Assembly: GCA_964057225.1 (NCBI GenBank)
Contig: OZ059900.1
Coordinates: 5,642,001 to 5,706,000 of the forward strand
Reading direction: 5' to 3'
From: Auanema rhodensis
Lineage: Eukaryota; Animalia; Nematoda
DNA length: 64,000 nt
The position numbers and the translations under genes were made by a program. Numbering within the stretch: the first letter of the stretch is position 1; every line of letters starts with the position of its first letter. Shown one piece after another: positions 12,301-64,000 of the stretch. The notes beneath the pieces were generated by a model, which worked only from the letters and a program-made list of their open reading frames with translations, did no database searches and was not told where the DNA came from.

Positions 12301-12592
12301 AGAACAGAAAATCAGTGGTAGAATGCTTTATTAACGAATGATAGCAACATTAGCAATAAAACGAACGTCTACAGTCCGTTGGGGTTGAGTTGAAGAATAT
12401 TTGTTTTTCGATCTTAAAGATGACCGCACATTTGGAGAACAGCTTGAAATGGGCAAAAAAGATGAGAAGCGAAAAAAATTGAAAAAAAAACATAGAAAAA
12501 TAATCGCCGGCCGTGATACCGTCTATCAAAGTTTGCTCATATATTATTGATTTTTTGAAAAAACATTTAATAATATTCTATTGAATAGTATA

Positions 12593-12660
12593 GCATCTTG
12601 GTGTAGTTGATGTGTTCCAGGTAAGTGAAAAACTTTCATTGGTTCAAATCCTCCTTAAGA
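12593..12660 (+). promoter_or_regulatory. tRNA-like Pol III A/B-box module 1 at the arm end (mirror at 15093-15160, - strand)
   Basis: A-box-like TGGTGTAGTTG at 12599 and B box GGTTCAAATCC at 12641, with tRNA-like spacing. Confidence 0.55.
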
Positions 12661-12918
12661 AATTTATAAAAACAAAAAATCTTTCTCTCTCTGTAAATCT
12701 CTATCCTCATTTCATCTACCATAACTAAATCTAAATCTCTCTCCCCACTTGAACCTCGAAATATCTCTGAAAACTGAAATCTAACCTATGACTTATGATG
12801 CCAACTTTGAAAAACATGGAATTCAAGAAGAAGCTTGCAACCAGATTACTGACGATAACTTTTGAAATTTTTAACATCTTTTTCTCTTTAAATTGACAAA
12901 ACGACCTTACCTATTATG

Positions 12919-12992
12919 AGCAGGATGGCCTAACGGTACCCTGTATGGATTACAGATTAACTAACTGAGTTCAATACCTTTCTCTGTTTTTT
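12919..12992 (+). promoter_or_regulatory. tRNA-like Pol III module 2 with T6 terminator (mirror at 14761-14834, - strand)
   Basis: A box TGGCCTAACGG at 12926, hairpin CTGTA/TACAG, B-box-like GAGTTCAATACC at 12967, acceptor-like pairing GCAGGA/TCTCTGT, then TTTTTT. Confidence 0.55.
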
Positions 12993-15892
12993 AAGAAAAT
13001 CAATATCAAATCAAGAATCCAAAAAAACGGTCGGATGGACTTGGACTGTGAAAAGTCCTTTTTTTTAACTTTTGAGCTTCGTAACTCAGTTAGAAATTAA
13101 TATTTTTCAATTTTGATTGAACAGTCAAATTGTGGGAGATGAACTCTTTCATCTCACTAAATTTTAATATCCTATTTGGTCTAGTATAGAAGTTATAGCC
13201 TCCTAAAGAGGAGATATAAAGTCAAAAACTTGACTTTGTAACGCTATATCTCCTTAACCATTGAGTTTTTCGAAAATATTTTAGCGGATCTGAACTCTAC
13301 GCAGAAAGATCTTTTAGAAAAGCTACCTACATTGAAGATTGGAGTAGTTTGAAAATTTCGAAAATAGAAAATTCGGCCAATTTCGGGTTTGAGAAATAAA
13401 AATTTTGAGTTTTTCGAAAAGTGAGAGTTGCATCTGATAGAGCTTGAATTGCTGATTTCAAATATAACAAGCAAATTTCTTAATTCTCGCTCTGAAAGGA
13501 GTTATGAGACTTTATATGTTTTGATGTTTTGTATTCAGAAGGCAATATCTAACTTCAGACGGCATTTCAGGAAATTTCAGTTAGCAGAATCGTTTTCTAC
13601 GTGTCTGTTTTACTTGGTCAACTTAGTTTCAAATCATTTTGTTCGAATTTTCAATTTTCGATCAAATGGCCCAAATCCATGTACTACCCCCTTACCTACT
13701 TTTTCATCAAAGTTGACCCTCATCACATGAACTTTTAAGATTTTCACAAGTTTTTTTCTTTAATTATATTTTATAAAAATAAGAATTAAAGATATTAGAA
13801 AAGAATTAATAAATATACTTTGAAAGTTCAAGAAATGCTTGTCTCATCTAACAATCATTCAGATGCTCAACAAATCTTGTTAACCTAAAACTTGTGACTA
13901 TTCCGATTCTCGTGGAACACTGCTTTCATTACAAATCTCTCAAGTTAGAAGTTGTTTCAAATTGGAAATCAACAAAAAACTTGTGATTTTTATTTCTCAG
14001 ACCTTGAGAAAATCTTAAAATTTCATGTGATGATGGTCAACTTTTTTGAAAAAGTAGGTAAGGGGGTAGTACATGGATTTGGACCATTTGATCAAAAATT
14101 GAAAATTCGAACAAAATGATTTGAAACTAAGTTGACCAAGTAAAACAGACACGTAGAAAACGATTCTGCTAACTAAAAATTCCTGAAATGCCGTTCGAAG
14201 TTAGATATTGCCTTCTGAATACAAAACATCAAAACATATAAAGTCTCATAACTCCTTTCAGAGCGAGAATTAAGAAATTTGCTTGTTATATTTGAAATCA
14301 GCAATTCAAGCTCTATCAGATGCAACTCTCACTTTTCGAAAAACTCAAAATTTTTATTTCTCAAACCCGAAATTGGCCGAATTTTCTATTTTCGAAATTT
14401 TCAAACTACTCCAATCTTCAATGTAGGTAGCTTTTCTAAAAGATCTTTCTGCGTAGAGTTCAGATCCGCTAAAATATTTTCGAAAAACTCAATGGTTAAG
14501 GAGATATAGCGTTACAAAGTCAAGTTTTTGACTTTATATCTCCTCTTTAGGAGGCTATAACTTCTATACTAGACCAAATAGGATATTAAAATTTAGTGAG
14601 ATGAAAGAGTTCATCTCCCACAATTTGACTGTTCAATCAAAATTGAAAAATATTAATTTCTAACTGAGTTACGAAGCTCAAAAGTTAAAAAAAAGGACTT
14701 TTCACAGTCCAAGTCCATCCGACCGTTTTTTTGGATTCTTGATTTGATATTGATTTTCTTAAAAAACAGAGAAAGGTATTGAACTCAGTTAGTTAATCTG
14801 TAATCCATACAGGGTACCGTTAGGCCATCCTGCTCATAATAGGTAAGGTCGTTTTGTCAATTTAAAGAGAAAAAGATGTTAAAAATTTCAAAAGTTATCG
14901 TCAGTAATCTGGTTGCAAGCTTCTTCTTGAATTCCATGTTTTTCAAAGTTGGCATCATAAGTCATAGGTTAGATTTCAGTTTTCAGAGATATTTCGAGGT
15001 TCAAGTGGGGAGAGAGATTTAGATTTAGTTATGGTAGATGAAATGAGGATAGAGATTTACAGAGAGAGAAAGATTTTTTGTTTTTATAAATTTCTTAAGG
15101 AGGATTTGAACCAATGAAAGTTTTTCACTTACCTGGAACACATCAACTACACCAACATGTTATACTATTCAATAGAATATTATTAAATGTTTCCGTATTG
15201 AATTATTACATTACTTTTCTTTTGAGTACGTTTTCAGAACTTGTTTTCTTTTATTATTTTATATGGTCAACAAGAAAAATGACAAAAAATTAAAAAAGTG
15301 TGAAATTCTTGTAGTTTGGTCCGTTTCAGAAAAGAATGAAAACAAATTGAATTAGTTTCTTTTTTAACTCAAGGGTTCATTCTCAAAATTTCTCTCAAAA
15401 TCGAAATCTCGTATTTACAGTTATTTTCAAAAAAATTCAAATTTAGTTGGTTGAAAAAATAAATTGTTAAAAAATGAAACAAAAGTCTTCCAATATTTAA
15501 TCTGGAATGAATTATTCGGCAAATATTCAATTGAAACAATGGAAAAAAAGCAAAATTTGGTAATTTAGTAATTTCAATTATAAAATATAAGTTCACATGT
15601 TTTTTTATTTTGAGATAAGATCTTTTTTCTATATTTATATAGCTTTGTCATTCAATTTCAGTTTTTTTGAGACATTGTGTCAATATTTAACCTGCATGAT
15701 GGTTATTGTAACTGTTATTGGCTGTGCTTAAAGTTGGGAAATATTTGATTGTTTTCAACTTTTATTGGTATTTAATTAACATAAAGTATAAGATAATGCT
15801 GACGATCGGAAAAAAATATTTTTCAAAAGAGATTATTTGACAAAAACTCTTCATAAACAAATTCAAATGCTTAAATAATATTGTTAATTTTT

Positions 15893-45800: not shown

Positions 45801-46597
45801 CATTATAGAACATGGATCGAATGCGGAAAGAAAAGATTGATCAAGAAAATGCACTGGAGCATGAACAAGAGCTTCTCTTCAATACTTTGGGTAAACAGAT
45901 GAATCAATTGAATGCTGAAAAGAGGTTGCTCTGATAAACTCATTGATTAATATTATCAAAACTTCTAGACGCATGCAGATAAGCTTACAAAAGGCTTACT
46001 TGTCAGGTTTTGTTGACACCGAGGACGATATTGGAAAACCTTCGAATAAGTACCTAGATTTTAGTAAAACAGAAAACTTTTCGAGTTTCAGTGAAATGAT
46101 AGTAGTAAACGAGCAAATCCGCAATCCAGCACAAGGCTGTAAAGAAATTCATCGTTTGCGTCAACAATTGCGCAAAGCTGAAGATACAATTCATGAACTC
46201 CGTGAACGTGACGTTACTAGTAAGCTAAAGTTAGTTGTATATGATTAAAAAGCTGTTGCAGAAACAACAACTATTCGTCAATTAGAAGGCTTATTGGGAG
46301 CAATGCAAGTGCAAAAAGACGGGCTCACAAGGTACTTATTAGCTTCTGCACTTTTTTCTCTTACAATTCATATATCAGGGATATATGTGAAGCTCTACAT
46401 CGTTTCAATTCCAAAAGCGATATTATAAACGCAATGCGTAAGACTACTACATCACCAGCATCTTCTGTTATGCATGAAACCTGCAGTAATCAAGGTGTGC
46501 ATAACTTTATTGTCAGGAAACCCAAATATTTTTCATAGATCCTGATGATATTTCCCGTAGCTCAATATCTCCATTTGGTGGACGCAATACTCAGTGA
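42807..46597 (+). CDS. CCDC6: Coiled-coil domain-containing protein 6-like (DUF2046)
   Basis: Spliced translation contains [43 protein letters not shown] and RKEKIDQENALEHEQELLFNTLGKQMNQLNAEKR. ATG at 42807 follows TTTTTCAG; TGA ends at 46597. Confidence 0.88.
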
Positions 46598-47474
46598 GAC
46601 CTGTTGCGCATGAGCTGATAAAATGCCGTTTTTTTTCGAGTTAATAACTTTTCCTAAATCAGGATAAATGGAAACTTTGTTTTTCACCGAAGTTTTTGCG
46701 TGTGTATAAGTATACTTATCTATACATAATGTACCAAGTAGATGTGTGCACTGTCTAATCTAGAGAAATATCAATGCATATTATCCTTTTAAAATATTAC
46801 ATTTATTTTATCTAATACATAAGATTATGTATATTTCCCTAGTGATTGTTTCATATCTCATGGAGATATGGCATTTGCCAATATCCAAAGGAACCGTTTG
46901 AATTCCTTCAACTTTGACTATTTTTTGATTTTGATTCTGCCCAACAATGTATTCAGAGGCATGCTTATGAGAGAGAAAGGGAGTGAATAGTGCTTTTGCG
47001 TATAGAACAGTGTCTATTGCTTCTCTAGGCTCTCTGTATATTTAATTTGTTCCGGTATTTGAATCTGTGAACTTTATTTTTTTCTTCACTGTATGCTCTG
47101 ATCTGTATGATTTGACCCATAATCGCTGATGCGTCCTCTTTTAGACCATCCACAATAAATGTTATACAGTTAGCACTTTTGTCCCTATTCTGTAGTTCTA
47201 AAAAAGATAAGTTTTGGAAAGAAGTGCAAGCAAAATGATTTACAATGTGAAAATCATGCCTATTAATCCACTACCTACCTGTTGAACAATGAGTTCTTCT
47301 TATTGAAACCAACATTACTGCAAGACAATTGATATCAGTGATACAATAAGAGTTTCTTTATTATAACAAGAACAACAAGAAAACAAATATTAGCCTGAGG
47401 CCAAAACAAAATAAAAAGTCTTGTAGACTTATGCAAACATAAAACGTGCAACAAAAAGTTTTCAACTGATTCCA

Positions 47475-48045
47475 TCAACAATCACTCTTCCAAACACGAA
47501 TGGTCGTATAAGGTTCAAGTCCGCTGGTAACAATCGAATTTTCAGTTGGATGACAATCCATGGCTCCAATAACTTCTGAACAATAAACTATGCTCTTACA
47601 ATCGTAATAATCACAAGCCAACCAGACATTCCTGTGATAGCTTGTACCACATTTTGGCTTTCCATATCCCAAATCAAGAGTTTCTTATCTTCAGATCCAC
47701 ACATTATAAACTGAATGAATTCATGCAGCATGCAACAAAGCGTGCCTATTACCTGTCCTGATGTAAAAGAGAAGCAGCAGTCAAGTTTATATCCCTCGTT
47801 TTTATGTCCCTTGTAGAGTTTCAAACAATTTTCTTCTTGCCAATCCCATAATTTAATGAAACTAAATTTCATAAATAAAAAAGCAAACATCCAATAGAAA
47901 ACTTTACCCGTCAAACGTAGCTGACAAGATATATTTTCCATTAGGAGAGAATCTTGCAAAAGACACAGGATATGAATTACCGTCTGCAGTCATTAGGTAA
48001 GATAGATAAAAAATTACATAAACAACAATCCTGAGATCCGTCTGC
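47475..48045 (-). pseudogene. 3' part of WDR5-like copy A, cut by the palindromic insertion
   Basis: Matches 54272-54842, then breaks abruptly at 48046. Confidence 0.9.
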
Positions 48046-48143
48046 TTTGAGACTTGAGGTAGATGCTGGCTTGCTAGCTCCATTCCACGGATCGACCCGC
48101 TCTTGCACTGCTGGCGTGAACGGCCCATCCCCTTTGGGGGAGA
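48046..48143 (+). pseudogene. U2: U2 snRNA 3' fragment (end of Sm site, SL III, SL IV, 3' flank hairpin)
   Basis: GCTGG-CTTG-CTAGC, GGATCG...TTGCACTGCTG...CGGCCCA and TCCCC-TTTG-GGGGA align with the recalled 3' half of nematode U2. Confidence 0.75.
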
Positions 48144-48146
48144 ATA

Positions 48147-48303
48147 ATCGTTCCTATCAAAATAACCTTCGATATGTGTTCTATTGGATCACAATAAGGT
48201 TAACCGATTTTTGAGACTTGAGGTAGATGCTGGCTTGCTAGCTCCATCTCACGGGTCGACCCGATCACTGCTGTCGGGAACGGCCCATTCTCTTTGGGGG
48301 ACA
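48147..48303 (+). pseudogene. U2: 5'-truncated U2 snRNA (from ~nt 38-39), lacking the branch-point and U6-pairing region
   Basis: ATCGTTCCTATC..AACCTTCGATAT (stem IIa), AATAAGGTTAACCGATTTTTGAG (Sm site), CTTG tetraloop and GGGTCG/CGGCCC SL IV. No ATCGCTTCT or GTGTAGTA upstream. Confidence 0.8.
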
Positions 48304-48425
48304 ATAATCACTCTCATCGAAGTACCTTCAAAACGCGATGGTTAATGCTAATATCAGCAAACAAACATGATGCACTTTCTACTTCCACGTTCACAATTAT
48401 AACCGCAAAACTAAACTTTAACTTC

Positions 48426-48544
48426 GCTTACGACCATACCACGTTGAAAGTACGCCATCCCGTCCGATCTGGCAAGTCAAGCAACGTTGGGCCCGGTTAG
48501 TACTTGGATCGGAGACGGCTTGGGAATCCCGGGTGCCGTAAGCT
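48426..48544 (+). rRNA. 5S rRNA gene
   Basis: GCTTACGACCATACCACGTTGAAAG...GTTAGTACTTGGATCGGAGACGGCTTGGGAATCCCGGGTGCCGTAAGCT, 119 nt, followed by a T-run terminator. Confidence 0.97.
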
Positions 48545-48700
48545 TTTTCTATTTTCAGAAAAAAAAAGTTTCAGAAAATAATTATTGATAATCAGATATG
48601 TGCTCCATTGATACGCGGATTTTTTGATTATCACTGTCATTAATTCAAATGCCTTTGGCATATTATTGATTCATTATGATGCAAACCGAAAACATTTCAG

Positions 48701-48876
48701 GAAGCTGAAAACACTTTTGGCACAGCAACAGTGAGTTTTCTTTTTTTTCGTTGTAATCATCTGTTTTCAGTCGAACATTGTTTCAACGGTTCTAGCGATT
48801 CAGAATAGACATCTCGATTATTGCTGAAATTGATTTTTCTTTCTTATTTTCAAAAATTGTCTTGTTTTTCAATAAA
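48701..48876 (+). pseudogene. Captured 3' end of a spliced gene (exon 48701-48730, 40-nt intron, terminal exon, AATAAA); mirror at 52270-52445
   Basis: atttcag|30 nt|gtgagt...ttttcag|...TGA at 48827 and AATAAA at 48871. Spliced frame EAENTFGTATSNIVSTVLAIQNRHLDYC*. Confidence 0.5.
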
Positions 48877-49280
48877 TGTTTCATGTTATCTTTCATAGTT
48901 TTGTTTATTTTTACAAACAAAAGTAGTTTTGGTCTAACTATTCGAAAGAAGTTTGGTTTTTCAATTCTTTAACACTACACAACAATCTGCCAAGTCAGGG
49001 ATATCTTAGAAAAAATGAACAAGTAATCTGCCCCCATGTGGCATACGGTGCACAACTATGTGAGGTCAGGTTAATCGTTTAAGCAGAAAAATAAATTATA
49101 ACGGGCCTCTCAAGACCCTTTTATTCTAATTTTGAATTCTCACTATCTATTTAGTGAGGAAAATAAAAAGAATCTGATTCAGATAAGAGATTCATTCCAA
49201 CATGAATCACAATATAGAAACCGTATTCTCTTTAGTTCCTTATTGATTTTTGCTCTGTTATATATTGTTTTTTAACATCA

Positions 49281-51865
49281 AATAGTATAACATCTTGGTG
49301 TAATGGTTGTGTTTCAGGTTAGTTGATAAACTCTCCTTGGATCAGATCCTCTCCAGGTAAGTTACAAAAATAAAAATATTCACAACTCTCTCTCTCTCTC
49401 TCTCCATCTCTCTCTGTCTATCTCTCCCTCAAAACCACACTCCATTGCAATATGTCCTTCCTACTTCATCATGTATTCTCCCTATATATTCTGAATACCT
49501 TATATCAGCTTCACAATCCTTGATTCTGGTGTAAACAACGATTTGCTCCATTTTGCAGTTAATTATCGTACTTATCACCTGATGTATGAGAATTAAACAA
49601 TAACAATATGAACATAGTGGTCTAGTGGTCCGAGTATTGGACTGCATTCTACACGGGCAAGTACAATCCCTTTCTGCGTTTTTTAAGAAAATCGATAGCA
49701 TATCGAAAATCCAAAAAACGCTCGGATGGATTTTGAACAAGGAAAAGTGTTTATTTTGGTATTTGAAAGCTGATATCTCTGTTTAAACTCAATATTTTTG
49801 AATTTTAATTAAGTCTTTCTGTAGTTCTGAATCACTGCTTCTCGCTTACAAAGATTTCAACTACTTTCTCGTTTGGTTCGAAAGTTAAAGCTTCATGAAT
49901 ATGAGACATGAAGCCTAAAGTTAGACTTTGAACTGCTCTATCTCTTTAACTATAAAGAATTTCAACAATTTTCGATCGGATTCACAATCTACGTACTGAG
50001 ATCTATCGAATGAACTGTCTATATTGAAGTTTGGAGCACTTTGAAATTTTGAAAATTATTGAAATTAGCTATTTTCAGGTTTGAGAAATAAAAATATTGC
50101 GTTTTCTAACTTTTAACTAGCTCAGACGATAGAGTTGAACATGCTGTTTTCAAATTTAAAAATGCCGATTTTCAATTTTCGCTTCTGAAGGAGTTATGAG
50201 ACTTTAAAGTTGTTGACGTTGAGTATTCAGAAGGATATATCTCCGTTCAGACAAATTTTCAGGAATTCGCAATTAGCAGATTCTACTTCTACGAGTTTGA
50301 TTTACCTATGTAATGAATTTCGAAAGTTTTGCTCGAAATTTTTGGTTTTTGATGAAATGATCCCATTCCATATACTCCCCCCTTACCTACTTTTCGACCA
50401 AAAACATCCGTCACCCCAGAAACATTTTGAAAATTTCTATTTTTTTTTGTTAATTATATGATATTATCTATAACAAATTAAAGTTTTATAGACGAAACAA
50501 CGTTAAGGTTGCTATTCTTATACTTGGAATCTTAGTTTCTCATTATATTCTCCTTTGAACATCAAAACGAGATTGCCCATACATTAGAAGATGAAACAAG
50601 GATAATCTTGGAATATATATCTGAGTTCATATCACATAGTTAACTATGACATATAAATAACGTCAAAAACTATAATTATCTAAAACTCTTCTGAAACTAT
50701 GAAAGTAAAAAAAACTTCAGAGTAGACGGTTTATCGATCGATTTTCATTGAAAAAATAGGTAAGGGGGGAGTATATGGAATGGGATGATTTCTTCAATAA
50801 CAAAAAATTTCGAGCAAAACCTTCGAAATTCATTACATAGGTAAATCAAACTCGTAGAAGTAGAATCTGCTAATTGCGAATTCCTGAAAATTTGTCTGAA
50901 CGGAGATATATCCTTCTGAATACTCAACGTCAACAACTTTAAAGTCTCATAACTCCTTCAGAAGCGAAAATTGAAAATCGGCATTTTTAAATTTGAAAAC
51001 AGCATGTTCAACTCTATCGTCTGAGCTAGTTAAAAGTTAGAAAACGCAATATTTTTATTTCTCAAACCTGAAAATAGCTAATTTCAATAATTTTCAAAAT
51101 TTCAAAGTGCTCCAAACTTCAATATAGACAGTTCATTCGATAGATCTCAGTACGTAGATTGTGAATCCGATCGAAAATTGTTGAAATTCTTTATAGTTAA
51201 AGAGATAGAGCAGTTCAAAGTCTAACTTTAGGCTTCATGTCTCATATTCATGAAGCTTTAACTTTCAAACCAAACGAGAAAGTAGTTGAAATCTTTGTAA
51301 ACGAGAAGCAGTGATTCAGAACTACAGAAAGACTTAATTAAAATTCAAAAATATTGAGTTTAAACAGAGATATCAGCTTTCAAATACCAAAATAAACACT
51401 TTTCCTTGTTCAAAATCCATCCGAGCGTTTTTTGGATTTTCGATATGCTATCGATTTTCTTAAAAAACGCAGAAAGGGATTGTACTTGCCCGTGTAGAAT
51501 GCAGTCCAATACTCGGACCACTAGACCACTATGTTCATATTGTTATTGTTTAATTCTCATACATCAGGTGATAAGTACGATAATTAACTGCAAAATGGAG
51601 CAAATCGTTGTTTACACCAGAATCAAGGATTGTGAAGCTGATATAAGGTATTCAGAATATATAGGGAGAATACATGATGAAGTAGGAAGGACATATTGCA
51701 ATGGAGTGTGGTTTTGAGGGAGAGATAGACAGAGAGAGATGGAGAGAGAGAGAGAGAGAGTTGTGAATATTTTTATTTTTGTAACTTACCTGGAGAGGAT
51801 CTGATCCAAGGAGAGTTTATCAACTAACCTGAAACACAACCATTACACCAAGATGTTATACTATT
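49281..51865. mobile_element. Foldback core of the same family as 12561-15192, with two tRNA-like modules and a (CT)n tract per arm
   Basis: Colinear shared blocks: AATAGTATA.CATCTTGGTGTA, TTTTTTAAGAAAATC, TTTGAGAAATAAAAAT, AGGAGTTATGAGACTTTA, GTATTCAGAAGG and CCCCTTACCTACTTTT. A boxes TGGTGTAATGG (49296) and TGGTCTAGTGG (49618). Confidence 0.85.
49386..49430. repeat. (CT)n microsatellite (mirror (AG)n at ~51716-51760)
   Basis: Direct reading. Confidence 0.9.
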
Positions 51866-52601
51866 TGATGTTAAAAAACAATATATAACAGAGCAAAAAT
51901 CAATAAGGAACTAAAGAGAATACGGTTTCTATATTGTGATTCATGTTGGAATGAATCTCTTATCTGAATCAGATTCTTTTTATTTTCCTCACTAAATAGA
52001 TAGTGAGAATTCAAAATTAGAATAAAAGGGTCTTGAGAGGCCCGTTATAATTTATTTTTCTGCTTAAACGATTAACCTGACCTCACATAGTTGTGCACCG
52101 TATGCCACATGGGGGCAGATTACTTGTTCATTTTTTCTAAGATATCCCTGACTTGGCAGATTGTTGTGTAGTGTTAAAGAATTGAAAAACCAAACTTCTT
52201 TCGAATAGTTAGACCAAAACTACTTTTGTTTGTAAAAATAAACAAAACTATGAAAGATAACATGAAACATTTATTGAAAAACAAGACAATTTTTGAAAAT
52301 AAGAAAGAAAAATCAATTTCAGCAATAATCGAGATGTCTATTCTGAATCGCTAGAACCGTTGAAACAATGTTCGACTGAAAACAGATGATTACAACGAAA
52401 AAAAAGAAAACTCACTGTTGCTGTGCCAAAAGTGTTTTCAGCTTCCTGAAATGTTTTCGGTTTGCATCATAATGAATCAATAATATGCCAAAGGCATTTG
52501 AATTAATGACAGTGATAATCAAAAAATCCGCGTATCAATGGAGCACATATCTGATTATCAATAATTATTTTCTGAAACTTTTTTTTTCTGAAAATAGAAA
52601 A

Positions 52602-52720
52602 AGCTTACGGCACCCGGGATTCCCAAGCCGTCTCCGATCCAAGTACTAACCGGGCCCAACGTTGCTTGACTTGCCAGATCGGACGGGATGGCGTACTTTC
52701 AACGTGGTATGGTCGTAAGC
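52602..52720 (-). rRNA. 5S rRNA gene (mirror copy)
   Basis: Reverse complement of 48426-48544. Confidence 0.97.
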
Positions 52721-52842
52721 GAAGTTAAAGTTTAGTTTTGCGGTTATAATTGTGAACGTGGAAGTAGAAAGTGCATCATGTTTGTTTGCTGATATTAGCA
52801 TTAACCATCGCGTTTTGAAGGTACTTCGATGAGAGTGATTAT

Positions 52843-53138
52843 TGTCCCCCAAAGAGAATGGGCCGTTCCCGACAGCAGTGATCGGGTCGACCCGTGAGAT
52901 GGAGCTAGCAAGCCAGCATCTACCTCAAGTCTCAAAAATCGGTTAACCTTATTGTGATCCAATAGAACACATATCGAAGGTTATTTTGATAGGAACGATT
53001 ATTCTCCCCCAAAGGGGATGGGCCGTTCACGCCAGCAGTGCAAGAGCGGGTCGATCCGTGGAATGGAGCTAGCAAGCCAGCATCTACCTCAAGTCTCAAA
53101 AATCAATTAACCTTATTGTGAACCAATGGAACACATAT
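52843..53138 (-). pseudogene. U2: Two tandem 5'-truncated U2 snRNA copies (52843-52999, 53003-53138)
   Basis: Mirror of 48046-48303. The outer copy extends 38 bp further, through the Sm site and stem IIb. Confidence 0.8.
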
Positions 53139-53317
53139 CAGCAGCATTCAAATTCTGAACAGCTTACGACATAAGATAAAACATCTAAAGTAAAATAGTC
53201 TTACTGAGCTTTCAGAACAGTTCAGATTAATTTTCTTTGCTGCCACAGAAGAAAGATGTGGTGCATTTGAATCCTAAATCATCAAACGGTGAAAATATCT
53301 GAATAAGTTTATACCAT
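53139..53317 (-). pseudogene. 5' part of WDR5-like copy A (ATG at 53317)
   Basis: Matches 55901-56079. Confidence 0.88.
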
Positions 53318-54271
53318 TTTAAAAAACGTTTGTGATGTTAATTTGAGTGAGAAATGTAAACCTGAAAAGAAAAAAAATAGGTTTGGAATAATGAAAATAA
53401 AATTATTTCCCATAAGCTAATTGTATAGAATAGTTTGCAAGTTATTTAAGTATTCACAACATATAAAACGTTTACCTATCCAAACAGAATAAACTAAACA
53501 GCAACATGTCATAGAAATACCAAGTATTACATAAATGAATATTAGGATGTACAATCATATCCGATCCTACACGCTGAGAAAACCCAATGAAACCAACAAT
53601 ATCATTACTTCCGCCATGTTACAACAATCAGTTATCTCATAAACAAAATAAAATTATGTTCTCCTCAAAAGAAATTGGAAAACAAAGTATACTAACCTAT
53701 AGCTATGATGACATTTAAAATATTAAGAAAATCAATAATTATCTAGAAAAAAACAATAAATATTCAAATATTCAAATTTTCGAAATGTACAGAATATTGG
53801 CACTGGACCACATATTCCTAACTAACAATGTTTAAAAAATTAATTGATTAAACAAAGAGGAAAAAAATGTGGAAGACAGATTACAAACATCTCAATGCGG
53901 AGAAAATAACGGAAACATAACAGGATGACTGTAGCAGACAGTATATACCCATTTGTCTGCATATTTTACCATCTACAGTCGTAAAACAGACAATCTTGAT
54001 AAAGCTTGAAGAATCCCAAAAGGGTTTGTTCAAATACGAAATATTTTTTTTGAAATTTACAGAAAGGTTAGTTGTAAAATAAAGTACAGATAATCTTGGA
54101 TGAAACCAACATTACTACAAGACAATTGATATCAGTGATACAATAAGAGTTTCTTTATTATAACAAGAACAACAAGAAAACAAATATTAGCCTGAGGCCA
54201 AAACAAAATAAAAAGTCTTGTAGACTTATGCAAACATAAAACGTGCAACAAAAAGTTTTCAACTGATTCCA

Positions 54272-56079
54272 TCAACAATCACTCTTCCAAACACGAATGG
54301 TCGTATAAGGTTCAAGTCCGCTGGTAACAATCGAATTTTCAGTTGGATGACAATCCATGGCTCCAATAACTTCTGAACAATAAACTATGCTCTTACAATC
54401 GTAATAATCACAAGCCAACCAGACATTCCTGTGATAGCTTGTACCACATTTTGGCTTTCCATATCCCAAATCAAGAGTTTCTTATCTTCAGATCCACACA
54501 TTATAAACTGAATGAATTCATGCAGCATGCAACAAAGCGTGCCTATTACCTGTCCTGATGTAAAAGAGAAGCAGCAGTCAAGTTTATATCCCTCGTTTTT
54601 ATGTCCCTTGTAGAGTTTCAAACAATTTTCTTCTTGCCAATCCCATAATTTAATGAAACTAAATTTCATAAATAAAAAAGCAAACATCCAATAGAAAACT
54701 TTACCCGTCAAACGTAGCTGACAAGATATATTTTCCATTAGGAGAGAATCTTGCAAAAGACACAGGATATGAATTACCGTCTGCAGTCATTAGGTAAGAT
54801 AGATAAAAAATTACATAAACAACAATCCTGAGATCCGTCTGCAATTATCGACTTTACACATAAGCGAGTATTGGAATTCCAAATACGGATCAATCCATCG
54901 TAAGCAGCAGTGCAGAAGTGAGTTCCATCACTGCAAATCAAAACAGTTTCACAAGCAACAAAACTAAAACTCACAAATTGAAATAAACAGCTGATACAAA
55001 ACCACAATGAGCATCTAACTGATGGAGACACAGTCCTGTGTTAACACTCCAAACACGTACAGTACCATCAATTGAGCCTGATATAACAAGCTTGCAAACA
55101 AAAGATTATGTCTAAAACAGCCAAACCTGATAAAGCTAACTTTGACTGCGGACACAAACTACAGCACAAAGCTTTCTGTTCATGTCCTTCAAAAACGCGA
55201 ATACACTTGCCGGACAATTGCTCCCAGAGCTTAAAAACGAAAAATTACAAGAATTTTCAATGTTAAATACCCTGCAAGTGCAATCGTCTGATGCTGAAAA
55301 CAACAACTTATCGTCCGAGCTCCACACAAGATCATTAACTCCTAATTTATGACCAGACATCTGGATAAAAATATTGTACCACCATATATATGCTTACGAA
55401 CCGTTTTCATAACTGCGCCGTTTATATAATTCCAAATTTTAATCATGCTATCGGAGGAAGCGGACGCAATGAAACTACCACAGTATGAGAACTTAACCGC
55501 ATTTACTGCTCTAGTGTGGCCATTCAAAGCAATGAATTCAACATAGTTCGGGCTTTTCTTTTTTTCGACCTAGAACGAATGAAAACTGTTTTTCGTTCTA
55601 ATGATAACACATTTCCTAACCTCTAAGTTATCATTCCTAGAATTCGCAGTTCTTTCCATCATCTCTTCATACACTTCATTACATTCCATTTCTTCAGGTA
55701 TAATGATGAATTCCTCCATAATATCATCGTCATCCTGTAATAAACAGTTTAAATTTGCAATTTCGAGAAAGAAACCTCATCGATAAGGTGAGATTCTTCT
55801 GATTTTGTGCAAGATAGCAAATTCGCTGTATTACTTTCACTCTTACTGTTGTTCTGAGAACTAAAATCTGAATGGAAGCCAGATTCCTTGTTTTCAGCAT
55901 CAGCAGCATTCAAATTCTGAACAGCTTACGACATAAGATAAAACATCTAAAGTAAAATAGTCTTACTGAGCTTTCAGAACAGTTCAGATTAATTTTCTTT
56001 GCTGCCACAGAAGAAAGATGTGGTGCATTTGAATCCTAAATTATCAAACGGTGAAAATATCTGAATAAGTTTATACCAT
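54272..56079 (-). CDS. wdr-5: WDR5-like WD40 protein, copy B
   Basis: Spliced sequence contains SPNY..LNGHTRAVNAVKFS..IASASSDSMIKIW, GHKLGVNDLVWSSD, SASDD, PVSFARFSPNGKYIL, GHKNEGY, GSED and C-terminal WKSDC, colinear with WDR5. Acidic N-terminal extension; the first coding exon is ATG only. Confidence 0.88.
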
Positions 56080-57034
56080 TTTAAAAAACGTTTGTGATGT
56101 TAATTTGAGTGAGAAATGTAAACCTGAAAAGAAAAAAAATAGGTTTGGAATAATGAAAATAAAATTATTCCCCATAAGCTAATTGTATAGAATAGTTTGC
56201 AAGTTATTTAAGTATTCACAACATATAAAACGTTTACCTATCCAAACAGAATAAACTAAACAGCAACATGTCATAGAAATACCAAGTATTACATAAATGA
56301 ATATTAGGATGTACAATCATATCCGATCCTACACGCTGAGAAAACCCAATGAAACCAACAATATCATTACTTCCGCCATGTTACAACAATCAGTTATCTC
56401 ATAAACAAAATAAAATTATGTTCTCCTCAAAAGAAAATTGGAAAACAAAGTATACTAACCTATAGCTATGATGACATTTAAAATATTAAGAAAATCAATA
56501 ATTATTTAGAAAAAAACAATAAATATTCAAATATTCAAATTTTCGAAATGTCCAGAATATTGGCACTGGACCACATATTCCTAATTAACAATGTTTAAAA
56601 AATTAATTAATTAAACAAAGAGGAAAAAAATGTGGAAGACAGATGACAAACATCTCAATGCGGAGAAAATAACGGAAACATAACAGGATGACTGTAGCAG
56701 ACAGTATATACCCATTTGTCTGCATATTTTACCATCTACAGTCGTAAAACAGACAATCTTGATAAAGCTTGAAGAATCCCAAAAGGGTTTGTTCAAATAC
56801 GAAATATTTTTTTTGAAATTTACAGAAAGGTTAGTTGTAAAATAAAGTACAGATAATCTTGGATGAAACCAACATTACTACAAGACAATTGATATCAGTG
56901 ATACAATAAGAGTTTCTTTATTATAACAAGAACAACAAGAAAACAAATATTAGCCTGAGGCCAAAACAAAATAAAAAGTCTTGTAGACTTATGCAAACAT
57001 AAAACGTGCAACAAAAAGTTTTCAACTGATTCCA

Positions 57035-58842
57035 TCAACAATCACTCTTCCAAACACGAATGGTCGTATAAGGTTCAAGTCCGCTGGTAACAATCGAATT
57101 TTCAGTTGGATGACAATCCATGGCTCCAATAACTTCTGAACAATAAACTATGCTCTTACAATCGTAATAATCACAAGCCAACCAGACATTCCTGTGATAG
57201 CTTGTACCACATTTTGGCTTTCCATATCCCAAATCAAGAGTTTCTTATCTTCAGATCCACACATTATAAACTGAATGAATTCATGCAGCATGCAACAAAG
57301 CGTGCCTATTACCTGTCCTGATGTAAAAGAGAAGCAGCAGTCAAGTTTATATCCCTCGTTTTTATGTCCCTTGTAGAGTTTCAAACAATTTTCTTCTTGC
57401 CAATCCCATAATTTAATGAAACTAAATTTCATAAATAAAAAAGCAAACATCCAATAGAAAACTTTACCCGTCAAACGTAGCTGACAAGATATATTTTCCA
57501 TTAGGAGAGAATCTTGCAAAAGACACAGGATATGAATTACCGTCTGCAGTCATTAGGTAAGATAGATAAAAAATTACATAAACAACAATCCTGAGATCCG
57601 TCTGCAATTATCGACTTTACACATAAGCGAGTATTGGAATTCCAAATACGGATCAATCCATCGTAAGCAGCAGTGCAGAAGTGAGTTCCATCACTGCAAA
57701 TCAAAACAGTTTCACAAGCAACAAAACTAAAACTCACAAATTGAAATAAACAGCTGATACAAAACCACAATGAGCATCTAACTGATGGAGACACAGCCCT
57801 GTGTTAACACTCCAAACACGTACAGTACCATCAATTGAGCCTGATATAACAAGCTTGCAAACAAAAGATTATGTCTAAAACAGCCAAACCTGATAAAGCT
57901 AACTTTGACTGCGGACACAAACTACAGCACAAAGCTTTCTGTTCATGTCCTTCAAAAACGCGAATACACTTGCCGGACAATTGCTCCCAGAGCTTAAAAA
58001 CGAAAAATTACAAGAATTTTCAATGTTAAATACCCTGCAAGTGCAATCGTCTGATGCTGAAAACAACAACTTATCGTCCGAGCTCCACACAAGATCATTA
58101 ACTCCTAATTTATGACCAGACATCTGGATAAAAATATTGTACCACCATATATATGCTTACGAACCGTTTTCATAACTGCGCCGTTTATATAATTCCAAAT
58201 TTTAATCATGCTATCGGAGGAAGCGGACGCAATGAAACTACCACAGTATGAGAACTTAACCGCATTTACTGCTCTAGTGTGGCCATTCAAAGCAATGAAT
58301 TCAACATAGTTCGGGCTTTTCTTTTTTTCGACCTAGAACGAATGAAAACTGTTTTTCGTTTTAATGATAACACATTTCCTAACCTCTAAGTTATCATTCC
58401 TAGAAATCGCAGTTCTTTCCATCATCTCTTCATACACTTCATTACATTCCATTTCTTCAGGTATAATGATGAATTCCTCCATAATATCATCGTCATCCTG
58501 TAATAAACAGTTTAAATTTGCAATTTCGAGAAAGAAACCTCATCGATAAGGTGAGATTCTTCTGATTTTGTGCAAGATAGCAAATTCGCTGTATTACTTT
58601 CACTCTTACTGTTGTTCTGAGAACTAAAATCTGAATGGAAGCCAGATTCCTTGTTTTCAGCATCAGCAGCATTCAAATTCTGAACAGCTTACGACATAAG
58701 ATAAAACATCTAAAGTAAAATAGTCTTACTGAGCTTTCAGAACAGTTCAGATTAATTTTCTTTGCTGCCACAGAAGAAAGATGTGGTGCATTTGAATCCT
58801 AAATCATCAAACGGTGAAAATATCTGAATAAGTTTATACCAT
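57035..58842 (-). CDS. wdr-5: WDR5-like WD40 protein, copy C
   Basis: Near-identical to copy B, with one N>I change in the N-terminal extension. Confidence 0.88.
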
Positions 58843-59798
58843 TTTAAAAAACGTTTGTGATGTTAATTTGAGTGAGAAATGTAAACCTGAAAAGAAAAAA
58901 AAATAGGTTTGGAATAATGAAAATAAAATTATTTCCCATAAGCTAATTGTATAGAATAGTTTGCAAGTTATTTAAGTATTCACAACATATAAAACGTTTA
59001 CCTATCCAAACAGAATAAACTAAACAGCAACATGTCATAGAAATACCAAGTATTACATAAATGAATATTAGGATGTACAATCATATCCGATCCTACACGC
59101 TGAGAAAACCCAATGAAACCAACAATATCATTACTTCCGCCATGTTACAACAATCAGTTATCTCATAAACAAAATAAAATTATGTTCTCCTCAAAAGAAA
59201 ATTGGAAAACAAAGTATACTAACCTATAGCTATGATGACATTTAAAATATTAAGAAAATCAATAATTATTTAGAAAAAAACAATAAATATTCAAATATTC
59301 AAATTTTCGAAATGTCCAGAATATTGGCACTGGACCACATATTCCTAATTAACAATGTTTAAAAAATTAATTAATTAAACAAAGAGGAAAAAAATGTGGA
59401 AGACAGATGACAAACATCTCAATGCGGAGAAAATAACGGAAACATAACAGGATGACTGTAGCAGACAGTATATACCCATTTGTCTGCATATTTTACCATC
59501 TACAGTCGTAAAACAGACAATCTTGATAAAGCTTGAAGAATCCCAGAAGGGTTTGTTCAAATACGAAATATTTTTTTTGAAATTTACAGAAAGGTTAGTT
59601 GTAAAATAAAGTACAGATAATCTTGGATGAAACCAACATTACTACAAGACAATTGATATCAGTGATACAATAAGAGTTTCTTTATTATAACAAGAACAAC
59701 AAGAAAACAAATATTAGCCTGAGGCCAAAACAAAATAAAAAGTCTTGTAGACTTATGCAAACATAAAACGTGCAACAAAAAGTTTTCAACTGATTCCA

Positions 59799-61606
59799 TC
59801 AACAATCACTCTTCCAAACACGAATGGTCGTATAAGGTTCAAGTCCGCTGGTAACAATCGAATTTTCAGTTGGATGACAATCCATGGCTCCAATAACTTC
59901 TGAACAATAAACTATGCTCTTACAATCGTAATAATCACAAGCCAACCAGACATTCCTGTGATAGCTTGTACCACATTTTGGCTTTCCATATCCCAAATCA
60001 AGAGTTTCTTATCTTCAGATCCACACATTATAAACTGAATGAATTCATGCAGCATGCAACAAAGCGTGCCTATTACCTGTCCTGATGTAAAAGAGAAGCA
60101 GCAGTCAAGTTTATATCCCTCGTTTTTATGTCCCTTGTAGAGTTTCAAACAATTTTCTTCTTGCCAATCCCATAATTTAATGAAACTAAATTTCATAAAT
60201 AAAAAAGCAAACATCCAATAGAAAACTTTACCCGTCAAACGTAGCTGACAAGATATATTTTCCATTAGGAGAGAATCTTGCAAAAGACACAGGATATGAA
60301 TTACCGTCTGCAGTCATTAGGTAAGATAGATAAAAAATTACATAAACAACAATCCTGAGATCCGTCTGCAATTATCGACTTTACACATAAGCGAGTATTG
60401 GAATTCCAAATACGGATCAATCCATCGTAAGCAGCAGTGCAGAAGTGAGTTCCATCACTGCAAATCAAAACAGTTTCACAAGCAACAAAACTAAAACTCA
60501 CAAATTGAAATAAACAGCTGATACAAAACCACAATGAGCATCTAACTGATGGAGACACAGCCCTGTGTTAACACTCCAAACACGTACAGTACCATCAATT
60601 GAGCCTGATATAACAAGCTTGCAAACAAAAGATTATGTCTAAAACAGCCAAACCTGATAAAGCTAACTTTGACTGCGGACACAAACTACAGCACAAAGCT
60701 TTCTGTTCATGTCCTTCAAAAACGCGAATACACTTGCCGGACAATTGCTCCCAGAGCTTAAAAACGAAAAATTACAAGAATTTTCAATGTTAAATACCCT
60801 GCAAGTGCAATCGTCTGATGCTGAAAACAACAACTTATCGTCCGAGCTCCACACAAGATCATTAACTCCTAATTTATGACCAGACATCTGGATAAAAATA
60901 TTGTACCACCATATATATGCTTACGAACCGTTTTCATAACTGCGCCGTTTATATAATTCCAAATTTTAATCATGCTATCGGAGGAAGCGGACGCAATGAA
61001 ACTACCACAGTATGAGAACTTAACCGCATTTACTGCTCTAGTGTGGCCATTCAAAGCAATGAATTCAACATAGTTCGGGCTTTTCTTTTTTTCGACCTAG
61101 AACGAATGAAAACTGTTTTTCGTTCTAATGATAACACATTTCCTAACCTCTAAGTTATCATTCCTAGAATTCGCAGTTCTTTCCATCATCTCTTCATACA
61201 CTTCATTACATTCCATTTCTTCAGGTATAATGATGAATTCCTCCATAATATCATCGTCATCCTGTAATAAACAGTTTAAATTTGCAATTTCGAGAAAGAA
61301 ACCTCATCGATAAGGTGAGATTCTTCTGATTTTGTGCAAGATAGCAAATTCGCTGTATTACTTTCACTCTTACTGTTGTTCTGAGAACTAAAATCTGAAT
61401 GGAAGCCAGATTCCTTGTTTTCAGCATCAGCAGCATTCAAATTCTGAACAGCTTACGACATAAGATAAAACATCTAAAGTAAAATAGTCTTACTGAGCTT
61501 TCAGAACAGTTCAGATTAATTTTCTTTGCTGCCACAGAAGAAAGATGTGGTGCATTTGAATCCTAAATTATCAAACGGTGAAAATATCTGAATAAGTTTA
61601 TACCAT
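59799..61606 (-). CDS. wdr-5: WDR5-like WD40 protein, copy D
   Basis: Near-identical to copy B. Confidence 0.88.
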
Positions 61607-62561
61607 TTTAAAAAACGTTTGTGATGTTAATTTGAGTGAGAAATGTAAACCTGAAAAGAAAAAAAATAGGTTTGGAATAATGAAAATAAAATTATTCCCC
61701 ATAAGCTAATTGTATAGAATAGTTTGCAAGTTATTTAAGTATTCACAACATATAAAACGTTTACCTATCCAAACAGAATAAACTAAACAGCAACATGTCA
61801 TAGAAATACCAAGTATTACATAAATGAATATTAGGATGTACAATCATATCCGATCCTACACGCTGAGAAAACCCAATGAAACCAACAATATCATTACTTC
61901 CGCCATGTTACAACAATCAGTTATCTCATAAACAAAATAAAATTATGTTCTCCTCAAAAGAAAATTGGAAAACAAAGTATACTAACCTATAGCTATGATG
62001 ACATTTAAAATATTAAGAAAATCAATAATTATTTAGAAAAAAACAATAAATATTCAAATATTCAAATTTTCGAAATGTCCAGAATATTGGCACTGGACCA
62101 CATATTCCTAATTAACAATGTTTAAAAAATTAATTAATTAAACAAAGAGGAAAAAAATGTGGAAGACAGATGACAAACATCTCAATGCGGAGAAAATAAC
62201 GGAAACATAACAGGATGACTGTAGCAGACAGTATATACCCATTTGTCTGCATATTTTACCATCTACAGTCGTAAAACAGACAATCTTGATAAAGCTTGAA
62301 GAATCCCAGAAGGGTTTGTTCAAATACGAAATATTTTTTTTGAAATTTACAGAAAGGTTAGTTGTAAAATAAAGTACAGATAATCTTGGATGAAACCAAC
62401 ATTACTACAAGACAATTGATATCAGTGATACAATAAGAGTTTCTTTATTATAACAAGAACAACAAGAAAACAAATATTAGCCTGAGGCCAAAACAAAATA
62501 AAAAGTCTTGTAGACTTATGCAAACATAAAACGTGCAACAAAAAGTTTTCAACTGATTCCA

Positions 62562-64000
62562 TCAACAATCACTCTTCCAAACACGAATGGTCGTATAAGG
62601 TTCAAGTCCGCTGGTAACAATCGAATTTTCAGTTGGATGACAATCCATGGCTCCAATAACTTCTGAACAATAAACTATGCTCTTACAATCGTAATAATCA
62701 CAAGCCAACCAGACATTCCTGTGATAGCTTGTACCACATTTTGGCTTTCCATATCCCAAATCAAGAGTTTCTTATCTTCAGATCCACACATTATAAACTG
62801 AATGAATTCATGCAGCATGCAACAAAGCGTGCCTATTACCTGTCCTGATGTAAAAGAGAAGCAGCAGTCAAGTTTATATCCCTCGTTTTTATGTCCCTTG
62901 TAGAGTTTCAAACAATTTTCTTCTTGCCAATCCCATAATTTAATGAAACTAAATTTCATAAATAAAAAAGCAAACATCCAATAGAAAACTTTACCCGTCA
63001 AACGTAGCTGACAAGATATATTTTCCATTAGGAGAGAATCTTGCAAAAGACACAGGATATGAATTACCGTCTGCAGTCATTAGGTAAGATAGATAAAAAA
63101 TTACATAAACAACAATCCTGAGATCCGTCTGCAATTATCGACTTTACACATAAGCGAGTATTGGAATTCCAAATACGGATCAATCCATCGTAAGCAGCAG
63201 TGCAGAAGTGAGTTCCATCACTGCAAATCAAAACAGTTTCACAAGCAACAAAACTAAAACTCACAAATTGAAATAAACAGCTGATACAAAACCACAATGA
63301 GCATCTAACTGATGGAGACACAGCCCTGTGTTAACACTCCAAACACGTACAGTACCATCAATTGAGCCTGATATAACAAGCTTGCAAACAAAAGATTATG
63401 TCTAAAACAGCCAAACCTGATAAAGCTAACTTTGACTGCGGACACAAACTACAGCACAAAGCTTTCTGTTCATGTCCTTCAAAAACGCGAATACACTTGC
63501 CGGACAATTGCTCCCAGAGCTTAAAAACGAAAAATTACAAGAATTTTCAATGTTAAATACCCTGCAAGTGCAATCGTCTGATGCTGAAAACAACAACTTA
63601 TCGTCCGAGCTCCACACAAGATCATTAACTCCTAATTTATGACCAGACATCTGGATAAAAATATTGTACCACCATATATATGCTTACGAACCGTTTTCAT
63701 AACTGCGCCGTTTATATAATTCCAAATTTTAATCATGCTATCGGAGGAAGCGGACGCAATGAAACTACCACAGTATGAGAACTTAACCGCATTTACTGCT
63801 CTAGTGTGGCCATTCAAAGCAATGAATTCAACATAGTTCGGGCTTTTCTTTTTTTCGACCTAGAACGAATGAAAACTGTTTTTCGTTCTAATGATAACAC
63901 ATTTCCTAACCTCTAAGTTATCATTCCTAGAATTCGCAGTTCTTTCCATCATCTCTTCATACACTTCATTACATTCCATTTCTTCAGGTATAATGATGAA
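62562..64000 (-). CDS. wdr-5: WDR5-like WD40 protein, copy E (5' end lies beyond the window)
   Basis: Near-identical to copy B up to the window edge. Confidence 0.85.

What the first reader, a model, noticed from the sequence alone, without database searches (positions are those of the whole stretch)
48046..53138. Composite palindrome that collects small-RNA genes: U2 fragments, 5S rRNA, captured exons and tRNA-like heads, all facing inward
Seen: each 2.35-kb arm reads, from outside in, U2' - U2' - 5S - spliced gene end - tRNA-like - (CT)n - tRNA-like - foldback core, in the same transcriptional sense. Relative to the bare 2.6-kb family member it has ~1.23 kb of extra cargo duplicated symmetrically. 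Inference: a Pack-type foldback that captures and mirrors flanking DNA, or a core that targets small-RNA loci. Read-through would make a multi-kb hairpin RNA matching 5S and U2. I know of no described element with this organisation.
Basis: partly seen in the sequence, partly recalled or inferred. Interest (0 to 1): 0.85.

Follow-up and report, generated by a model that had tools for sequence, protein, structure and literature searches.

The report
Mirror-image RNA-gene piece pasted into gene
A 5-kb mirror-image stretch made of a foldback repeat plus neighbouring small-RNA genes sits inside one broken copy of a tandemly repeated worm gene, and its ragged ends show it was most likely pasted in by DNA-break repair from a larger palindrome elsewhere, not by a new kind of gene-collecting transposon.

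Summary
The palindrome is in the sequence as described: 2,349-nt arms, 8 mismatches, all in the inner core. The tRNA heads belong to the foldback family itself (shared with the 2.6-kb member, about 65-70% identical); only 1.23 kb is cargo. The 5,091-bp insert replaces 1,056 bp of the first copy of a young WDR5-like tandem array. There is no target duplication, the ends differ by 39 nt, one junction is blunt and the other has 3-nt microhomology. That is an end-joining scar, not transposition. The scan noted a similar structure before on other DNA: an 8.1-kb U2/5S palindrome 4.5 Mb downstream. Its noted sizes imply an inner span of 4,528 nt against 4,533 here if one arm has one more U2 tail, so it is the likely parent; I could not compare the sequences. 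Verdict: probably a genuine, young, repair-mediated insertion of a hairpin piece. The Pack-type 'collector' reading is not supported. Modest interest.

The parts
47304..48045 (-). 3' part of the disrupted WDR5-like gene copy (last exons and 3' UTR); left flank, cut inside an exon; blunt junction
   Evidence: 99.9% identical to 54101-54842 and three later copies; Pfam WDR5 propeller hits on the intact copy
48046..50394 (+). left arm of the 5.1-kb palindrome
48046..48146 (+). outer headless U2 tail, cut 63 nt after its presumed start
48147..48306 (+). inner headless U2 tail beginning at about U2 nt 39 (the Utopia insertion site), with Sm site and stem-loops III and IV, plus trailer
   Evidence: Rfam U2 66 bits; Utopia 3' flanks start at nt 39 (PMC4640811)
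48307..48329 (+). decayed start of a third U2 tail running into the 5S upstream region
48426..48544 (+). full-length 5S rRNA gene with T5 terminator
   Evidence: Rfam 107.5 bits
48701..48876 (+). plausible spliced gene end: 30-nt exon, 40-nt intron, 57-nt last exon to stop, AATAAA at 48871
   Evidence: intron-like pair in 2.5% of shuffles; parent gene not identified
49082..49161 (+). SmY-like RNA (stem 1, Sm site, 9-bp stem 2); below the Rfam gathering score
   Evidence: 25.7 bits, E 0.007-0.019; fold z -3.2
49276..49385 (+). outer tRNA-like head (A box 49296, B box 49339); start of homology with the 2.6-kb family member
   Evidence: z 27 against the bare element
49386..49430 (+). (CT)n tract
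49601..49672 (+). inner tRNA-like head (A box 49618, B box 49660), T6 terminator at 49679
49673..50394 (+). conserved non-coding foldback core arm, about 70% identical to the bare member
50395..50751 (.). 357-nt spacer; edges are decayed continuations of the arms, middle is unique
50752..53100 (-). right arm (mirror of the left; SmY-like 51985-52064, 5S 52602-52720, U2 tails 52840-53100)
53101..53139 (-). 39 extra nt of the outer U2 tail found only at the right end; the last 3 nt (53137-53139) are microhomology with the WDR5-like exon
53137..54100 (-). 5' remnant of the disrupted WDR5-like copy (upstream region, first exon, 18 nt of the next exon), pointing into the palindrome; the frame stops 7 codons inside it
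54101..64000 (-). undisrupted 2,763-bp units of the WDR5-like tandem array (99.6-99.8% identical); 54843-55898 is the 1,056-bp stretch missing from the first copy
12561..15192 (.). bare 2.6-kb member of the same foldback family: 1,190-nt arms, 13 mismatches, same two tRNA-like heads, no target duplication found

Best explanation
Two steps. (1) At a donor locus a non-coding foldback element (two tRNA-derived heads plus core per arm) lay beside a native cluster of U2 tails, 5S, a small gene and an SmY-like gene. A break or single-stranded stretch let the element's arms snap back and prime synthesis that mirrored this flank, giving a larger palindrome, probably the 8.1-kb U2/5S palindrome noted 4.5 Mb downstream (inferred). 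(2) Recently a hairpin piece of that palindrome, cut across its stem inside the U2 tails at near-mirror positions (39 nt apart), was joined by end-joining repair into a break in the first copy of a WDR5-like tandem array, with loss of 1,056 bp. The junction anatomy is shown; the hairpin intermediate and the donor are inferred. The result is a passenger scar that knocks out one of at least four copies of the gene, with no sign of a function of its own.
For: No target duplication, 1,056-bp target loss, blunt left junction, 3-nt microhomology on the right; same junction class as 'distant inverted insertions' at yeast breaks (0-4 nt microhomology; inversions form within single-stranded pieces; PMC11724301). 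Snap-back of inverted repeats in single-stranded DNA is established (PMC10164571); germline end joining with minimal homology and templated inserts is established in C. elegans (PMC4490562). Ends lie inside U2 tails, not at family termini; two independent cuts would fall within 39 nt of mirror position only 3-7% of the time. Arm mismatches are confined to the inner core. The host array is 99.6-99.9% homogeneous, so the event is young.
Against: The parent was never seen: its sequence, and whether it has the foldback core, come from unchecked notes. With equal tail numbers the implied span is 4,692 nt, 159 too long; I tried three options and one fits. Documented inverted insertions in yeast are 50-150 bp, far shorter than 2.3 kb. 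The 1,799-nt identical tract is weak evidence of recency, because the bare member also has a 959-nt identical tract (P about 0.03). No read spans either junction.
Confidence: 0.6

Rival explanations
1. Single event: the mirror was made during the insertion itself. A one-sided donor (U2 tails, 5S, SmY, foldback) was copied or broken, snapped back on the foldback arms, ran off to the end and was end-joined into the WDR5 copy. The 8.1-kb palindrome is independent or has a different interior.
For: Explains zero cargo mismatches and near-equal ends just as well; the long end lies 24-27 nt inside a presumed Utopia cut site, a possible source of the break.
Against: Does not explain why the noted 8.1-kb palindrome's implied inner span matches to within 5 nt.
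Confidence: 0.14
2. A recurrent composite mobile unit: the foldback family regenerates one arm from the other as part of how it spreads, so it routinely mirrors and carries flanking DNA, and small-RNA clusters are frequent cargo.
For: Members 30-35% diverged from each other each keep 99% identical arms with mismatches clustered near the spacer; a further palindrome with twin tRNA-like heads is noted 1.4 Mb away; several mirror-image duplications of small-RNA loci are noted in this genome; even the bare member shows no target duplication.
Against: Arm-to-arm gene conversion explains arm identity without mobility; the ends here are not defined termini; no coding capacity; only one, possibly two, cargo-bearing copies are known.
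Confidence: 0.15
3. Pack-type or small-RNA-targeting transposon: a transposase-mobilised element that inserts at small-RNA genes and adds them layer by layer.
For: All RNA genes face inward; Mutator-type elements aimed at Pol III genes are noted in this genome (unchecked).
Against: No target duplication; target deletion; cargo outside the family arms; present site is a protein-coding exon; the bare member is not beside an RNA gene. A shared orientation is expected from one co-oriented native cluster mirrored once.
Confidence: 0.06
4. Assembly or amplification artefact (fold-back chimera).
For: Perfect long palindrome inside a near-identical tandem array; junctions not read-confirmed.
Against: The arms differ at 8 sites; the spacer edge is homologous to the other family member; the 39 extra nt differ from the inner tail, so they cannot be copied from within the window; the flanks return to the same gene in the same orientation. 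If the genome is Auanema rhodense, the published assembly used HiFi reads from bulk DNA with no amplification step described. Ten DNA runs of three studies hold 57-72% of the words of 50395-55898, more than the 50% due to the WDR5 unit; this supports the parts, not the junctions.
Confidence: 0.05

Closest known systems
Distant inverted (templated) insertions at double-strand breaks (PMC11724301); polymerase-theta end joining in the nematode germ line (PMC4490562)
   Same: Two inverted copies from one distant locus captured at a break; 0-4 nt junction microhomology; loss of target bases; no target duplication.
   Different: Arms here are 2.3 kb, not 50-150 bp, and the fold-back primer would be a 1.1-kb repeat element, not a 2-11-nt microhomology; natural and heritable if real.
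Inverted-repeat-primed fold-back palindrome formation (PMC10164571)
   Same: A pre-existing inverted repeat anneals in single-stranded DNA and mirrors one flank.
   Different: There the product is a dicentric chromosome; here it is a bounded local palindrome that was later moved.
Pack-MULEs and MULEs with tandem terminal repeats (PMC3310237)
   Same: Non-autonomous, long inverted repeats, host gene fragment on board.
   Different: Cargo is outside the family arms and duplicated in mirror; no target duplication; no defined termini; target deleted.
Dada small-RNA-gene-targeting DNA transposons (PMC3706591)
   Same: Association with snRNA and tRNA-like sequence.
   Different: Dada has a DDE transposase, 6-7-bp target duplications, no terminal inverted repeats and sits inside RNA genes; none of this holds here.
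Utopia U2-targeting retrotransposons (PMC4640811)
   Same: The U2 tails start at about nt 39, Utopia's 3' junction, so they are probably a by-product of Utopia activity at the donor.
   Different: No Utopia sequence or reverse transcriptase is in the palindrome; it explains the tails only.
Long-arm foldback repeats (nematode Tc4/Tc6-like and IR families, Drosophila FB/Galileo; from my own knowledge, not tested)
   Same: 1-3-kb non-coding elements with near-perfect long arms and a short spacer.
   Different: Two inward tRNA-derived Pol III heads per arm; I found no description of that, but my literature search was limited (one search returned nothing).

Membership tests
Pack-MULE / Pack-type TIR transposon | Target-site duplication flanking the element | tested here: not met
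   Longest shared word in 35 nt of each flank is 4-5 nt and out of register; 1,056 bp of target deleted
Pack-MULE / Pack-type TIR transposon | Captured gene pieces lie between the terminal inverted repeats | tested here: not met
   Cargo 48046-49275 lies outside the family arms, which begin at about 49276
Pack-MULE / Pack-type TIR transposon | Defined, matching termini shared by several copies | tested here: not met
   Ends differ by 39 nt and fall inside U2 tails; other copies could not be surveyed
Pack-MULE / Pack-type TIR transposon | Termini related to an autonomous transposase-encoding partner | not testable with these tools
   No access to the rest of the genome
Dada | DDE transposase, 6-7-bp target duplication, insertion inside an RNA gene, no terminal inverted repeats | tested here: not met
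   No ORF with a family hit; site is a WDR5-like exon; features from PMC3706591
Repair-mediated inverted templated insertion | 0-4 nt microhomology at the outer junctions, no target duplication | tested here: met
   0 nt left, 3 nt right
Repair-mediated inverted templated insertion | Both arms come from one distant donor locus | tested here: inconclusive
   No donor in the window; size arithmetic fits a noted 8.1-kb palindrome; sequence not compared
Repair-mediated inverted templated insertion | Homology at the turn that could prime fold-back | tested here: met
   The foldback family arms, with the 8 mismatches confined to the inner 550 nt
Long-arm foldback repeat family (core) | Dispersed copies with long near-perfect arms and a short spacer, non-coding | tested here: met
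   Two members in the window; a possible third noted elsewhere (unchecked)
SmY RNA | Rfam RF01844 gathering score of 39 bits | tested here: not met
   25.7 bits; two stems and Sm site present, so 'SmY-like' only
Genuine genomic sequence | Reads spanning both junctions | not testable with these tools

The most novel reading that the evidence does not exclude
The core is an undescribed nematode foldback family with twin inward tRNA-derived heads that spreads without a transposase: one arm is rebuilt from the other by fold-back synthesis, adjacent DNA is mirrored in the process, and hairpin pieces are released and captured at breaks. It would then be a recurrent engine that duplicates and moves small-RNA gene clusters around the genome.
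Probability: 0.15. Interest if true: 0.7.

Novelty: new variant of a known kind. Interest (0 to 1): 0.33.

Why it matters
If the 8.1-kb parent is confirmed, this is a clean natural, multi-kilobase example of a process so far shown mainly with short pieces in yeast: a palindrome shedding a hairpin that is pasted into a distant gene. It would show one way 5S and snRNA genes get scattered, and that a foldback repeat can seed mirror duplications. As a single scar in a redundant gene copy it has little functional weight; its interest rises only if a genome-wide census shows the family does this repeatedly.

Tried and rejected
Attempts to reach other loci of this genome through proteins failed: ten ORFs are not in the collection, the arm ORF 51406-51714 has no homologue and no Pfam hit, and a WDR5 exon returned only generic multi-WD40 proteins. 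A conserved core pattern has no match in metagenome contigs. No intact tRNA; the heads do not fold better than shuffles, and their parent tRNAs were not assigned. No target duplication at either element. My first estimate that zero cargo mismatches is highly significant (P 1e-6) was dropped because mismatches cluster near the spacer in both members; the fair figure is about 0.03. A U1-like reading of the antisense of head 1 was dropped: no Rfam U1 hit. The Auanema paper does not mention this element and holds no supplements here.
Full report
Observation. The palindrome is present as described: arms 48046-50394 and 50752-53100 (2,349 nt) around a 357-nt spacer. There are 8 substitutions between the arms, all at 49845-50390; the outer 1,799 nt are identical. 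All face inward. SmY-like RNA, short introns and TTTTCAG acceptors point to a nematode; earlier notes name Auanema, which I did not test directly.

What is family and what is cargo. The 2.6-kb element at 12561-15192 is a relative but only about 65-70% identical. Significant homology covers head 1 (z 27), head 2 (z 4.8), the core (z 42-76) and the spacer edge (z 4.9), but not the (CT)n zone, the mid-spacer or anything outside 49276. So the tRNA-like heads are a family trait and only 48046-49275 (1,230 nt) is cargo. Both members keep arms 99% identical with mismatches clustered near the spacer, so arm homogenisation is general in this family and zero cargo mismatches is only mild evidence of youth (P about 0.03).

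The left flank 47304-48045 is 99.9% identical to 54101-54842, part of a 2,763-bp tandem array (99.6-99.8% identical units) of a WDR5-like gene on the minus strand. The 5,091-bp palindrome replaces 1,056 bp of the first copy and both cuts are inside exons. The left junction is blunt; the right has 3 nt of microhomology and 39 more nt of U2 tail than the left. No target duplication exists. Cut-and-paste transposition gives fixed termini and a target duplication; this is instead the signature of end-joining repair. In yeast, two inverted pieces from one distant locus are captured at breaks with 0-4 nt of microhomology and can form inside single-stranded pieces (PMC11724301). Inverted repeats fold back readily in single-stranded DNA (PMC10164571). 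Nematode germ cells repair breaks by polymerase-theta end joining with minimal homology and templated inserts (PMC4490562).

Donor. Nothing in the window is a donor for the cargo. Earlier, unchecked notes on this genome report linked U2-5S units, a U2-5S-SmY-like and orphan-gene island, and Utopia elements 4.35-4.64 Mb downstream or on other pieces; the Auanema rhodense preprint reports 5S, tRNA and U2 arrays (10.64898/2026.08.27.747507). The tails begin at about U2 nt 39, where Utopia inserts (PMC4640811). Two notes fit together numerically: an 8,150-nt palindrome 'pointing two U2/5S cassettes at each other' and, 708 nt inside it, a 1,021-nt U2 gene with five or six extra tails. A 38-nt head plus six 164-nt tails is 1,022 nt; if the other arm has one tail more, the span between the innermost tails is 4,528 nt, against 4,533 nt here. 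With equal tail numbers it would be 4,692 nt. I take this as good but indirect evidence that the 5.1-kb piece is the centre of that larger palindrome. Two independent cuts would be within 39 nt of mirror position only 3-7% of the time, which suggests that a hairpin was cut across its stem. I could not reach the parent's sequence.

Mechanism, shown against inferred. Shown: anatomy, family/cargo boundary, junctions, target deletion, youth of the host array. Inferred: fold-back priming on the foldback arms that mirrored a native U2-5S-gene-SmY flank; release of a hairpin piece; capture by end joining. Confidence 0.6. Rivals: mirror formed during the insertion from a one-sided donor (0.14); a family that habitually mirrors and moves its flanks (0.15); a Pack-type or RNA-gene-targeting transposon (0.06); artefact (0.05).

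Hairpin RNA. Pol III read-through is excluded by terminators: T5 at the end of 5S, T6 eight nt after head 2, and 23 runs of five or more T in the interior. The surviving upstream part of the broken WDR5-like copy points into the right arm, so Pol II could enter; its frame stops 7 codons in and it meets the captured AATAAA at 52275 and three more before the spacer. A long hairpin RNA is possible but unshown.

Limits. Ten DNA runs from three studies hold 57-72% of the words of 50395-55898, of which the WDR5 unit explains 50%, so palindrome parts exist in independent data, but the junctions are unconfirmed. If this is the published A. rhodense assembly it rests on HiFi reads from bulk DNA, which argues against an amplification chimera. 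Spliced models were examined exon by exon only.

Verdict. Observation confirmed, interpretation partly supported. Most likely a young repair-mediated insertion of a piece of a larger foldback-seeded palindrome: a new variant of a known kind. Interest 0.33; the novel reading (a transposase-free, flank-mirroring foldback family) has probability about 0.15 and would merit about 0.7.

Noticed in passing
window 53137-64000 and 47304-48045: Very young 2,763-bp tandem array of a WDR5-like gene, running off the window end. The true unit junction is at 54100/54101. The first copy's upstream part (53672-53882) has six private variants that the later copies lack.
   Followed up: partly
window 12561-15192: Bare foldback member: 13 arm mismatches, 11 of them within 193 nt of the spacer, a 959-nt identical tract, and no target duplication; the same gradient as in the large palindrome.
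   Followed up: yes
window 12186-12278: A degenerate 90-nt fragment of the same foldback core (about 74% identity, E 5e-10) lies 280 nt left of the bare element in reverse orientation; perhaps an older insertion at the same spot.
   Followed up: no
window 12615-12628 and 49351-49364: Both family members carry a perfect 5' splice-site consensus (CAG/GTAAGT) in the outer tRNA-like head, at different positions; read antisense it resembles the 5' end of U1, but Rfam gives no U1 hit.
   Followed up: partly
window 49296-49551 and 12599-12860: After the outer tRNA-like head the first T4 run is about 200 nt downstream of the B box in both members although the intervening sequences are unrelated, whereas the inner head ends at a T6 run 7-8 nt after its B box; a possible ~260-nt Pol III transcript.
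   Followed up: no
window 49429-49740 and 51406-51717: A 103-codon open frame on the antisense of the inner tRNA-like head; no homologue, no Pfam hit; probably chance.
   Followed up: yes
window 16000-40000 and 43700-46600: Gene-rich surroundings with many short introns (what look like glutamate-synthase exons and a coiled-coil gene, judged by eye only), which suggests soma-retained DNA if this species eliminates repeats.
   Followed up: no
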